Shown here piece by piece: positions 44,632-45,000 of a stretch of DNA of 64,000 bases. Both the position numbers and the translations under genes were made by a program. The stretch is from Auanema rhodensis (Eukaryota; Animalia; Nematoda), in the NCBI GenBank assembly GCA_964057225.1, contig OZ059900.1, positions 4,402,001-4,466,000 of the forward strand, read 5' to 3'. The notes below the pieces were generated by a model. That model had not been told where the DNA came from, searched no databases, and worked only from the letters and a program-made list of their open reading frames with translations. How positions within the stretch are numbered: the stretch's first letter is position 1; each line of letters begins with the position of its first letter.

Positions 44632-44653
44632 AAAACTCAAGGCAAGCCTTGAG
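44632..44653 (-). terminator. Hairpin plus T4, candidate Pol III terminator
   Basis: CTCAAGGC-TT-GCCTTGAG-TTTT; first T4 run downstream of the tRNA-like head. Confidence 0.4.
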
Positions 44654-44680
44654 AACCTTAGGTTTTTATGAAGATGCCGC

Positions 44681-44884
44681 CTACTCGGCGGGCTTTGTCT
44701 TGGCGGCCTCAAGGGCCTTCTCCAGCTGGGCGATCTTGGCATCCTTGGAGGCTTCCGCCTGCAAGTCTGCCAGGAGCTTCTCCAGGCCCTTCACGTTGAG
44801 GAAGGCTTTGCCTCCCTTAAAGTCAATTAGGCGGAGTACCCTGAGAGCTGGTACTCTCACCTTACCCTCTTTAGCCTTGGCCAT
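44681..44884 (-). CDS. 67-aa small ORF in the retroelement 5' cassette
   Basis: MAKAKEGKVRVPALRVLRLIDFKGGKAFLNVKGLEKLLADLQAEASKDAKIAQLEKALEAAKTKPAE; TTTCAG 6 nt upstream of ATG. Confidence 0.55.
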   Translation of the reverse strand: MAKAKEGKVRVPALRVLRLIDFKGGKAFLNVKGLEKLLADLQAEASKDAKIAQLEKALEAAKTKPAE

Positions 44885-44918
44885 CACTGACTGAAAGATT
44901 GGAGGGTTATTGCAGTCT

Positions 44919-44999
44919 TGGCGCCAGCCGGGATCGAACCAGTAAGTGTAAGTAGCCTCGGATTTGTAGTCCTGGTGTTACACCACTTGGCCATCCCGG

Positions 45000-45000
<1 letters not shown>
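44919..45000 (-). ncRNA. tRNA-like head with Pol III A and B boxes at the 28S junction
   Basis: A box TGGCCAAGTGG at +8, 7-nt anticodon-like loop CTACAAA, B box GGTTCGATCCC, GCCGGGA/TCCCGGC pairing; D stem does not pair. Confidence 0.6.

What the first reader, a model, noticed from the sequence alone, without database searches (positions are those of the whole stretch)
44632..45000. Self-contained tRNA-head / trans-splice acceptor / small ORF / terminator cassette at the 5' end of a 28S-targeted retroelement
Seen (minus strand): 28S stops at CATCTAATTAG and its last G is G1 of an 82-nt tRNA-like sequence with A box (TGGCCAAGTGG) and B box (GGTTCGATCCC). TTTCAG follows 22 nt later, 6 nt before an ATG. 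Then come an intact 67-codon ORF, a perfect hairpin and TTTT, the first T4 run in about 370 nt. The cassette recurs at 7706-8074. Known: R2 and several other rDNA elements are co-transcribed by Pol I and released by HDV-like ribozymes; TTTCAG just upstream of ATG is the nematode SL trans-splice signature; T4 or longer ends Pol III transcripts. Inference: the element replaces the ribozyme with a tRNA mimic (RNase P release or Pol III promoter) and may gain a cap by SL trans-splicing to translate an accessory protein. I know of no described RLE element with this layout.
Basis: partly seen in the sequence, partly recalled or inferred. Interest (0 to 1): 0.9.

Follow-up and report, generated by a model that had tools for sequence, protein, structure and literature searches.

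The report
tRNA-derived leader cassette on R4 retrotransposon
A jumping gene that lives in a nematode's 28S rRNA genes starts with a small conserved module (tRNA-derived head, short protein gene, hairpin plus TTTT); the module is real and under selection, but every copy here is a relic and no RNA evidence shows how it works.

Summary
The second copy at 8074-7706 is not independent. It lies inside a 2.4-kb segmental duplication that includes the 28S flank.

The cassette is not a one-off. Two diverged relatives lie 8.2 Mb away on the same contig, outside 28S. All three families keep the same five features:
- the head, about 80% identical, with A and B boxes
- a YAG just before ATGGCYAAG
- the short ORF (codon differences 3rd > 1st > 2nd position; pN below pS)
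- a hairpin whose stem changes by compensatory substitutions
- the first T4 of the unit

In two families an R4-type RT ORF follows. That ORF has YMDD, CCHC and restriction-like endonuclease motifs.

Limits:
- The genome holds only 9 full heads, and none is joined to an intact RT ORF.
- The two intact copies of this element carry a different 2.7-kb tandem-repeat leader, joined exactly at the cassette's T-run.
- The head folds as an extended hairpin, not a cloverleaf. ARAGORN finds nothing and Rfam gives 16 bits.

Best reading: this is an exchangeable 5' leader built on a tRNA-derived, UM2-like Pol III promoter head. It is a new variant of a known kind.

The parts
45001..45407 (-). 28S rRNA gene upstream of the insertion. 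It ends at ...CATCTAATTAG, reference position 162 of the main-array 28S as numbered.
   Evidence: Rfam LSU hit 44960-45407 and the alignment. It is 98% identical to the main-array 28S up to ref 162. This genome's R4 elements have their 3' junction at ref 161/162 and their usual 5' junction at ref 172-178.
44919..45000 (-). 82-nt tRNA-derived head. The A box is at nt 8-18 and the B box at nt 62-72. It folds as an extended hairpin.
   Evidence: boxes. (not a tRNA by ARAGORN or Rfam). (consensus hairpin: 82% of cells paired against 26-46% when slid, 3 compensatory pairs). (model R1 gives 11 hits in the genome).
44885..44918 (-). Linker containing TTTCAG (44896-44891), 6 nt before the ATG.
   Evidence: YAG followed by ATGGCYAAG is kept in all three families, while the rest of the linker is not conserved.
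44681..44884 (-). 67-codon ORF (MAKAKEGKVRVPALRVLRLIDFKGG...) plus its stop codon.
   Evidence: Homologous ORFs are intact in families 2 and 3. Codon-position differences run 3rd > 1st > 2nd, with pN 0.36-0.45 against pS 0.67-0.78. No Pfam or database homologue.
44632..44653 (-). 7-bp hairpin (44653-44636) followed by TTTT (44635-44632).
   Evidence: The stems in the three families are CTCAAGG/CCTTGAG, CTCTGGGC/GCCCAGAG and CTCTGAG/CTCAGAG, so three stem positions changed on both sides. T4 follows in each.
44265..44631 (-). Rest of element A's 5' UTR, with a CT-rich tract and a 138-bp palindrome at 44303-44440.
   Evidence: It matches the 5' UTR of the intact A copies at 87-95%. Copies lie at 49966-49601 and 11879-11514.
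41097..44264 (-). Body of element A (R4-type). It is defective here: about 900 bp including the ORF start is deleted and the frame is broken.
   Evidence: 97% identical to L063:4802-8303. RVT_1 found in the ORF piece 42144-43487. The intact ORF elsewhere is 1275 aa with YMDD, CCHC and a PD...E...K endonuclease motif.
37325..41091 (-). A second R4-type element (B), stacked behind A. Five 28S bases (AGTGA) lie between them.
   Evidence: The 28S resumes at 37324, which is ref 226.
7706..8074 (-). Identical second copy of the cassette, inside the segmental duplication 7573-10004.

Best explanation
The cassette is a real 5' leader module of one R4-clade retrotransposon lineage (element A and its relatives), and selection has kept it.

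It has four parts:
- a tRNA-derived head that keeps the Pol III A and B boxes but folds as an extended hairpin
- a splice-acceptor-like YAG directly before the start codon
- a short protein-coding ORF
- a conserved hairpin followed by T4

Most likely mechanism (inferred, not shown): the head acts like the C. elegans UM2 leaders. Those are tRNA-derived A/B-box promoters that start a Pol III transcript at nt 1, and the transcript ends at the first T4. The module would then be a self-contained unit of about 365 nt that fixes the element's 5' end exactly at the 28S junction.

The module is exchangeable and not essential. The only intact copies of A carry a different tandem-repeat leader, joined at the cassette's T-run.

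The two copies in this window are dead relics in a decayed rDNA unit.
For: Conservation as one unit:
- Three families keep the same order of parts. They share about 80% identity in the head, 40-46% at the amino-acid level in the ORF, and have saturated synonymous sites.
- The head is far better conserved than the ORF's synonymous sites. It has 3 compensatory pairs in its central helix.
- The terminal hairpin covaries at 3 positions, and T4 follows in every family. No earlier T4 occurs in any family: the first is at nt 366, 411 and 349.
- A/B-box matches to the consensus, scored out of 11 by reading the alignments: 11 and 11 (window), 11 and 9 (family 2), 10 and 9 (family 3), 11 and 10 (the partial head). 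The box pair occurs twice in the window against 0.01 expected.

Linkage to the element:
- In the window the cassette runs into A's 5' UTR and body.
- In family 2, about 390 nt after the T4, an ORF start follows that is 65% identical in amino acids and 82% in nucleotides to A's ORF.
- A is an RLE-bearing RT element at the R4 site.

Module boundaries:
- The module starts at the 28S junction.
- It ends in the T-run, exactly where the alternative leader of the intact copies is joined, at TTATCGG.

Precedent: C. elegans UM2 leaders are tRNA-derived A/B-box promoters. They start about 70 nt upstream of the mature RNA, and their transcripts terminate at the first TTTT (PMC2527325).
Against: - There is no RNA evidence of any kind.
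- A Pol III transcript is uncapped. UM2 constructs did not give protein in C. elegans (PMC2527325), which does not fit well with an ORF under coding constraint.
- The box nucleotides also lie in the covarying helix, so their conservation may be structural and not related to a promoter.
- The joint chance of no earlier T4 in the three families is about 0.16, the product of the three shuffle fractions. That is not compelling.
- No cassette copy is attached to an intact RT ORF, and the genome has only 9 full heads.
- Neither the head nor the ORF was found in foreign R4-clade contigs or in metagenomes.
- The alternative leader is itself full of hairpin-T4 units. Hairpin-T4 may therefore do something other than terminate Pol III.
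Confidence: 0.42

Rival explanations
1. The element is co-transcribed with 28S by Pol I. The structured head is cut off at the junction by tRNA-processing enzymes (RNase P or Z). SL trans-splicing at TTTCAG then caps the downstream RNA so that the small ORF, and perhaps the RT ORF, can be translated.
For: - YAG directly before ATGGCYAAG is kept in all three families, while the surrounding linker is not.
- The ORF shows a coding pattern of substitution, so a translatable, capped RNA is needed.
- The genome has at least 51 tandem SL1-like genes.
- The base of the head pairs from nt 1, with a G:C to A:U change between families, read from the alignments. This fits a defined 5' end.
- No HDV-like ribozyme is detected where R4 and Dong have one (PMC3774820).
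Against: - The head does not fold as a cloverleaf, and no tRNA model scores it. Nothing shows that it is an RNase P or Z substrate.
- A trans-spliced RNA would lose the head, so it cannot be the template that copies the head to new sites.
- No SL-joined reads could be sought.
- The family 2 and 3 copies lie outside 28S.
Confidence: 0.2
2. This is a capture model. The cassette is an independent small Pol III gene or SINE-like RNA. Its full-length transcript, from nt 1 to the U-tail, was copied onto the 5' end of element A when the reverse transcriptase jumped templates during insertion. It would then have no function for the element.
For: - The module's ends coincide with a Pol III start (nt 1 of the head) and a Pol III stop (the T-run). 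A's own sequence, as defined by the intact copies, begins right there.
- Family 3 consists of five cassettes in a local tandem array with no RT.
- The 5' junction at ref 162 is atypical for this genome's R4 elements, which use ref 172-178.
- Template jumping at 5' ends is established for R2-type reverse transcriptases. This point is from my own knowledge and was not checked here.
Against: - Family 2 repeats the same cassette-UTR-A-like ORF order in a lineage whose RT ORF start has pS 0.46 against A. That requires either one ancient capture that was then kept, or two independent captures.
- The family is tiny, with 9 heads, which is unlike an abundant Pol III RNA.
- The ORF is under coding constraint, which is unexpected for a Pol III RNA.
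Confidence: 0.2
3. Chance resemblance or assembly artefact in a repeat-rich, decayed rDNA region.
For: - The region is a rearranged rDNA pseudo-array next to a 176-bp satellite.
- The two window copies are a single duplicated segment.
Against: - Two diverged families on the same contig, 8.2 Mb away, share every part with covariation and a coding signal.
- The box pattern is 200-fold above chance.
Confidence: 0.03

Closest known systems
R4-clade non-LTR retrotransposons (R4 of Ascaris, Dong of Bombyx)
   Same: Element A has one large ORF with RT (YMDD), CCHC and a restriction-like endonuclease motif. It inserts at the R4 position of 28S, 27 nt downstream of the R2 site, with its 3' junction at ref 161/162. 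Its relatives sit in TAA repeats and next to a 5S gene.
   Different: Published R4 and Dong begin with an HDV-like self-cleaving ribozyme (PMC3774820). This lineage begins with a tRNA-derived A/B-box head, a short upstream ORF and a hairpin-T4. No ribozyme model matches it, and its covarying fold is nested, not the HDV double pseudoknot.
C. elegans UM2 leaders (tRNA-derived A/B-box Pol III promoters of snoRNA units; PMC2527325)
   Same: Both have a tRNA-derived leader with A and B boxes ahead of a downstream RNA. In both, the unit ends at the first TTTT, and four Ts suffice in C. elegans. The host phylum is the same.
   Different: The downstream body here is a conserved protein-coding ORF and not a snoRNA (no Rfam hit). 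The unit is fused to the 5' end of a retrotransposon. Polymerase use is untested.
tRNA-derived SINEs
   Same: Both have a head with A/B boxes that no longer folds as a tRNA. The body is unrelated to the head, and the unit ends in a T-run.
   Different: There is no LINE-derived 3' tail. The genome has only 9 copies in 3 places. The body carries a constrained ORF. The unit sits upstream of the LINE and is not dispersed on its own.
Exchangeable LINE 5' leaders (for example the mouse L1 monomer arrays; from my own knowledge)
   Same: Closely related copies of one element (97% identical bodies) carry unrelated 5' leaders. One of them is a tandem-repeat array. In family 2 the heads are stacked.
   Different: The leader here is tRNA-derived and contains an ORF and a terminator-like end.

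Membership tests
bona fide tRNA gene | Cloverleaf recognised by tRNA finders or covariance models | tested here: not met
   ARAGORN finds 0 genes in the window and in the family 2 and 3 loci. Rfam's best hit is tRNA-Sec at 16.2 bits against a gathering score of 47, for the window copy only. Families 2 and 3 give no hit.
bona fide tRNA gene | Internal A and B boxes at tRNA positions | tested here: met
   11/11 and 11/11 matches in the window copy, at nt 8-18 and 62-72.
tRNA-derived SINE | Pol III head plus a LINE-derived 3' tail, dispersed in many copies | tested here: not met
   There are 9 full heads in 3 locations. No similarity to any R4 3' end was found downstream of the family 3 units.
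UM2-type tRNA-like-leader Pol III unit | A/B-box leader upstream of the product, with the transcript ending at the first T4 | tested here: met
   Met at the sequence level only: and the alignments. The definition comes from PMC2527325.
UM2-type tRNA-like-leader Pol III unit | Transcribed by Pol III, with a product that is a small non-coding RNA | not testable with these tools
   The reads tools gave nothing. The body is an ORF with a coding substitution pattern and no Rfam family.
R4 clade (element A) | RT plus a C-terminal CCHC and restriction-like endonuclease | tested here: met
   RVT_1 at E 9e-23. YMDD at residue 725, CCHC at 1065-1082, followed by KPD...E...K. No phylogeny was built.
R4 clade (element A) | Site-specific insertion in 28S at the R4 site | tested here: met
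   The 3' junctions are at ref 161/162 in four loci. In the window, the upstream 28S ends at ref 162.
R4 clade (element A) | HDV-like ribozyme at the 5' end (PMC3774820) | tested here: inconclusive
   No ribozyme family matches at E <= 10 in 44500-45100. The covarying fold of the head is nested. However, Rfam models are insensitive to HDV-like folds, and they also found none in another intact R4 of this genome.
SL trans-spliced nematode mRNA | TTTCAG-type acceptor close to the ATG | tested here: met
   The motif is TTTCAG in two families and TTACAG in the third.
SL trans-spliced nematode mRNA | Reads joining SL1 or SL2 to the acceptor | not testable with these tools

The most novel reading that the evidence does not exclude
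An rDNA-resident retrotransposon lineage has replaced the usual self-cleaving ribozyme with host machinery. A tRNA-derived leader would define or release its 5' end from the 28S co-transcript. SL trans-splicing at the conserved YAG would then cap a Pol I-derived (or Pol III-derived) RNA so that a small accessory protein is translated. This would be the trypanosome trick of making mRNA from a non-Pol II transcript, used here by a metazoan transposon.
Probability: 0.12. Interest if true: 0.85.

Novelty: new variant of a known kind. Interest (0 to 1): 0.5.

Why it matters
R2- and R4-type elements are the standard model for how a transposon without its own promoter lives inside rRNA genes. Every characterised case frees its RNA with an HDV-like ribozyme.

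A lineage whose 5' end is instead a tRNA-derived promoter-like head, with its own short coding ORF and a terminator-like end, would be a second solution to that problem. It would also link LINE 5' leaders to the SINE and UM2 way of using Pol III.

The finding further shows leaders being swapped at a precise boundary between near-identical copies of one element.

Its weight is limited. The copies are relics, the family is tiny, and nothing is known about expression.

Tried and rejected
Expression is therefore unknown, not absent.
- Homologues of the small protein. The word-indexed search found none. The exhaustive profile search gave only multi-stretch coiled-coil matches in long proteins. Pfam found nothing. 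The AlphaFold2 model (pLDDT 71: short helix, beta-hairpin, long helix) has no Foldseek match at E <= 0.001.
- Cross-species search. The head pattern and the ORF profile found nothing in metagenome contigs. The head model found nothing in six foreign R4-clade contigs. The upstream ORFs of two of those contigs are not detectably related to the small ORF.
- HDV-like or other ribozymes. None at E <= 10.
- Separate ages for the cassette and the RT part. I first thought the cassette ORF (pS 0.67) was much older than the A-like ORF start (82% nucleotide identity). The codon-based pS of that start is 0.46 over 81 codons, so co-divergence cannot be rejected, and I dropped the claim.
- 5' ends of other R4-like families.

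Full report
**What is in the window**

On the minus strand a diverged rDNA unit runs 18S, 5.8S, 28S. The 28S stops at 45001 with ...CATCTAATTAG. Comparison with the uninterrupted main-array 28S puts this at reference position 162. That is the site where this genome's R4 elements have their 3' junction (ref 161/162). Their 5' junctions normally lie at ref 172-178, which gives an 11-18 bp target duplication.

- an 82-nt head with perfect A- and B-box consensus matches
- 22 nt of linker, then TTTCAG, then 6 nt, then ATG
- a 67-codon ORF
- a perfect 7-bp hairpin
- the first TTTT of the unit, at nt 366

The A-core plus B-box pattern occurs only at the two cassette copies, against 0.01 expected.

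**What follows the cassette**

- 44631-44265 is the 5' UTR of an R4-type element, which I call A.
- 44264-41097 is A's body. It is 97% identical to intact copies elsewhere, but here about 900 bp including the ORF start is deleted and the frame is broken.
- Five 28S bases (AGTGA) follow A.
- A second R4-type element, B, occupies 41091-37325.
- The 28S resumes at ref 226.

This agrees with another first-reader note on the same window.

Intact A encodes 1275 aa with RVT_1, YMDD, a CCHC motif and a PD...E...K endonuclease motif. Its foreign relatives sit in TAA repeats and beside a 5S gene. A is therefore an R4-clade element.

**Independence of the two window copies**

They are not independent. 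The block 7573-10004 equals 44499-46930 at 99.7% identity and includes 28S. A genome search with the head plus ORF finds only these two places.

**The cassette has relatives**

A protein search with the 67-aa ORF found two diverged families 8.2 Mb away on the same contig. Nucleotide comparison showed that the head lies upstream of each.
- Family 2 has two copies, in an 8.2-kb repeat.
- Family 3 has five copies, in a local tandem array with 1156- and 2782-bp spacing.

Neither family lies in rDNA.

The three-way alignments show the same order of parts in each family:
- The head is about 80% identical.
- A poorly conserved linker ends in TTTCAG or TTACAG, 0-6 nt before ATGGCYAAG.
- The ORF has the core VPxLxVLx6GGxAxIxVxGLExL. 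Family 2 has a stop after the ancestral ATG and starts at a later ATG.
- A hairpin follows the stop codon.
- T4 follows the hairpin.

A covariance model of the head finds 11 places in the 181-Mb genome and no others: 9 full heads and 2 partial heads stacked upstream of the family 2 heads.

**Evidence of selection**

- ORF: codon-position differences are 22/18/34, 27/18/38 and 25/18/31 (positions 1/2/3) for the three pairs. pN is 0.36-0.45 against pS of 0.67-0.78. This is a coding pattern.
- Head: it is about 80% identical while synonymous sites are saturated. RNAalifold gives an extended hairpin, not a cloverleaf, with three compensatory pairs. 82% of cells are paired, against 26-46% when the partners are slid. 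The partial head lacks exactly the apical stem-loop.
- Terminal hairpin: the outer CTC/GAG pairs are fixed, and the inner pairs differ by changes on both sides at three positions.
- T4: in each family the first T4 after nt 1 follows this hairpin, at nt 366, 411 and 349. By chance alone this is weak: 0.71, 0.70 and 0.32 of shuffles lack an earlier T4.

**Is the head a tRNA?**

Only in origin. ARAGORN finds nothing. Rfam gives 16 bits to tRNA-Sec for the window copy and nothing for the other families. What survives is the pair of promoter boxes, scored out of 11 for A and B:

| Head | A box | B box |
|---|---|---|
| Window | 11 | 11 |
| Family 2 | 11 | 9 |
| Family 3 | 10 | 9 |
| Partial head | 11 | 10 |

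The essential G53, C56 and A58 of the B box are kept in all of them. I scored these by reading the alignments.

**Link to the retrotransposon**

The link is real, but not universal.
- In family 2, about 390 nt after the T4, there is an ORF start that is 65% identical in protein and 82% in DNA to A's ORF. Its pS is 0.46. It breaks off after about 80 codons.
- Family 3 has no RT.
- The only two intact A ORFs, on C4 and at C8:11.55 Mb, are flanked by 28S. Between the 28S (ref ~172) and A's UTR they carry a different 2.7-kb leader made of 214/109-bp tandem repeats rich in hairpin-T4 units. That leader is joined at TTATCGG, inside the cassette's T-run.
- 5'-truncated leader pieces that start just after the small ORF's stop codon sit next to the 176-bp satellite, at 49966 and 11879.

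So the cassette is an old, exchangeable 5' module of this lineage. In this assembly no cassette is attached to a working element.

**Mechanism**

Published R4 and Dong elements begin with an HDV-like ribozyme that cleaves at the element's 5' end (PMC3774820). No such ribozyme is detected here, and the covarying fold has the wrong topology for one. Rfam is insensitive to these folds, however, and found none in another intact R4 of this genome either.

In C. elegans, UM2 leaders are tRNA-derived A/B-box promoters. They start Pol III about 70 nt upstream of snoRNAs, their transcripts stop at the first TTTT, and they do not give protein from a GFP fusion.

The cassette has the sequence anatomy of such a unit, and its ends coincide with the module boundaries seen between copies. 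I therefore favour a UM2-like Pol III leader that defines the 5' end. My confidence is about 0.4 for the mechanism and about 0.8 for 'conserved leader module of the A lineage'.

The constrained ORF fits this model poorly. Capture of an independent Pol III RNA by template jumping explains the boundaries and family 3, but not the repeated cassette-A order, and I also put it at about 0.2.

**What could not be done**

- No RNA data. I worked beside those places afterwards.
- No homologue of the small protein or of the head was found outside this genome.

**Verdict**

This is a new variant of a known kind, of moderate interest.

Noticed in passing
L063:880-3581 (C4:577880-580581) and the same region in L064: The two intact A elements carry a 2.7-kb leader of tandem repeats (214 bp x 5.4, with a 109-bp sub-unit). 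Each sub-unit holds a hairpin of about 15 bp followed by CTATTTT. It may be a promoter-like monomer array.
   Followed up: partly
L047:186-225 (C8:11021885-): Another intact R4 family starts GAACTCACAG... The last two 28S Gs plus GAAC can pair with GTTCCC about 30 nt downstream. This resembles the P1 stem of an HDV-like ribozyme that includes 28S bases. Rfam found no ribozyme there.
   Followed up: no
window 11885-35650 and 49972-64000: A 176-bp satellite (copies 92-97% alike) forms the spacer of this diverged rDNA cluster. A 104-bp piece identical to 18S (48383-48486) sits inside it at 18700-18803.
   Followed up: no
window 47998-48951 and 36457-37324: The 18S here spans the whole Rfam model in only 954 nt, so it has a large internal deletion. 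The 28S 3' part is 84-88% identical to the main array and also has an internal deletion. The unit is a pseudogene.
   Followed up: partly
window 44303-44440: A 138-bp near-perfect palindrome (94%) lies inside A's 5' UTR copy. The colinear spacer copy at 49728-49601 lacks it.
   Followed up: no
L070:189-230 (Logan contig of another organism): A distant R4-clade relative (28% RT identity) has a 209-aa upstream ORF that begins TTTACAG ATT ATGGCCAAAGC (MAKA...). This is the same start context as the cassette ORF, but the proteins are not detectably related (hhalign E 0.08).
   Followed up: partly
L067:4033-4148: The closest foreign relative of A's protein (33% identity) lies directly upstream of a 5S rRNA gene. 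This suggests a 5S-targeting member of the clade.
   Followed up: no
G000:C3:6.74-7.10 Mb: At least 51 SL1-like RNA genes lie in tandem at 252/504-bp spacing. They match the model full-length at 54-62 bits, below the Rfam cut-off of 75.
   Followed up: no
L048:33-4168 (C8:11072600-): A 5'-truncated A copy in the main array is flanked by a 507-bp duplication of 28S (ref 161-667), in place of the usual 11-18 bp.
   Followed up: no
L046:4990-6190: Each family 3 head is preceded by an A9 run (..CCGAAAAAAAAAC|ACCGG). The 1156-bp unit downstream of the cassette is AT-rich and has no ORF. It might be a non-autonomous retroposon unit.
   Followed up: partly
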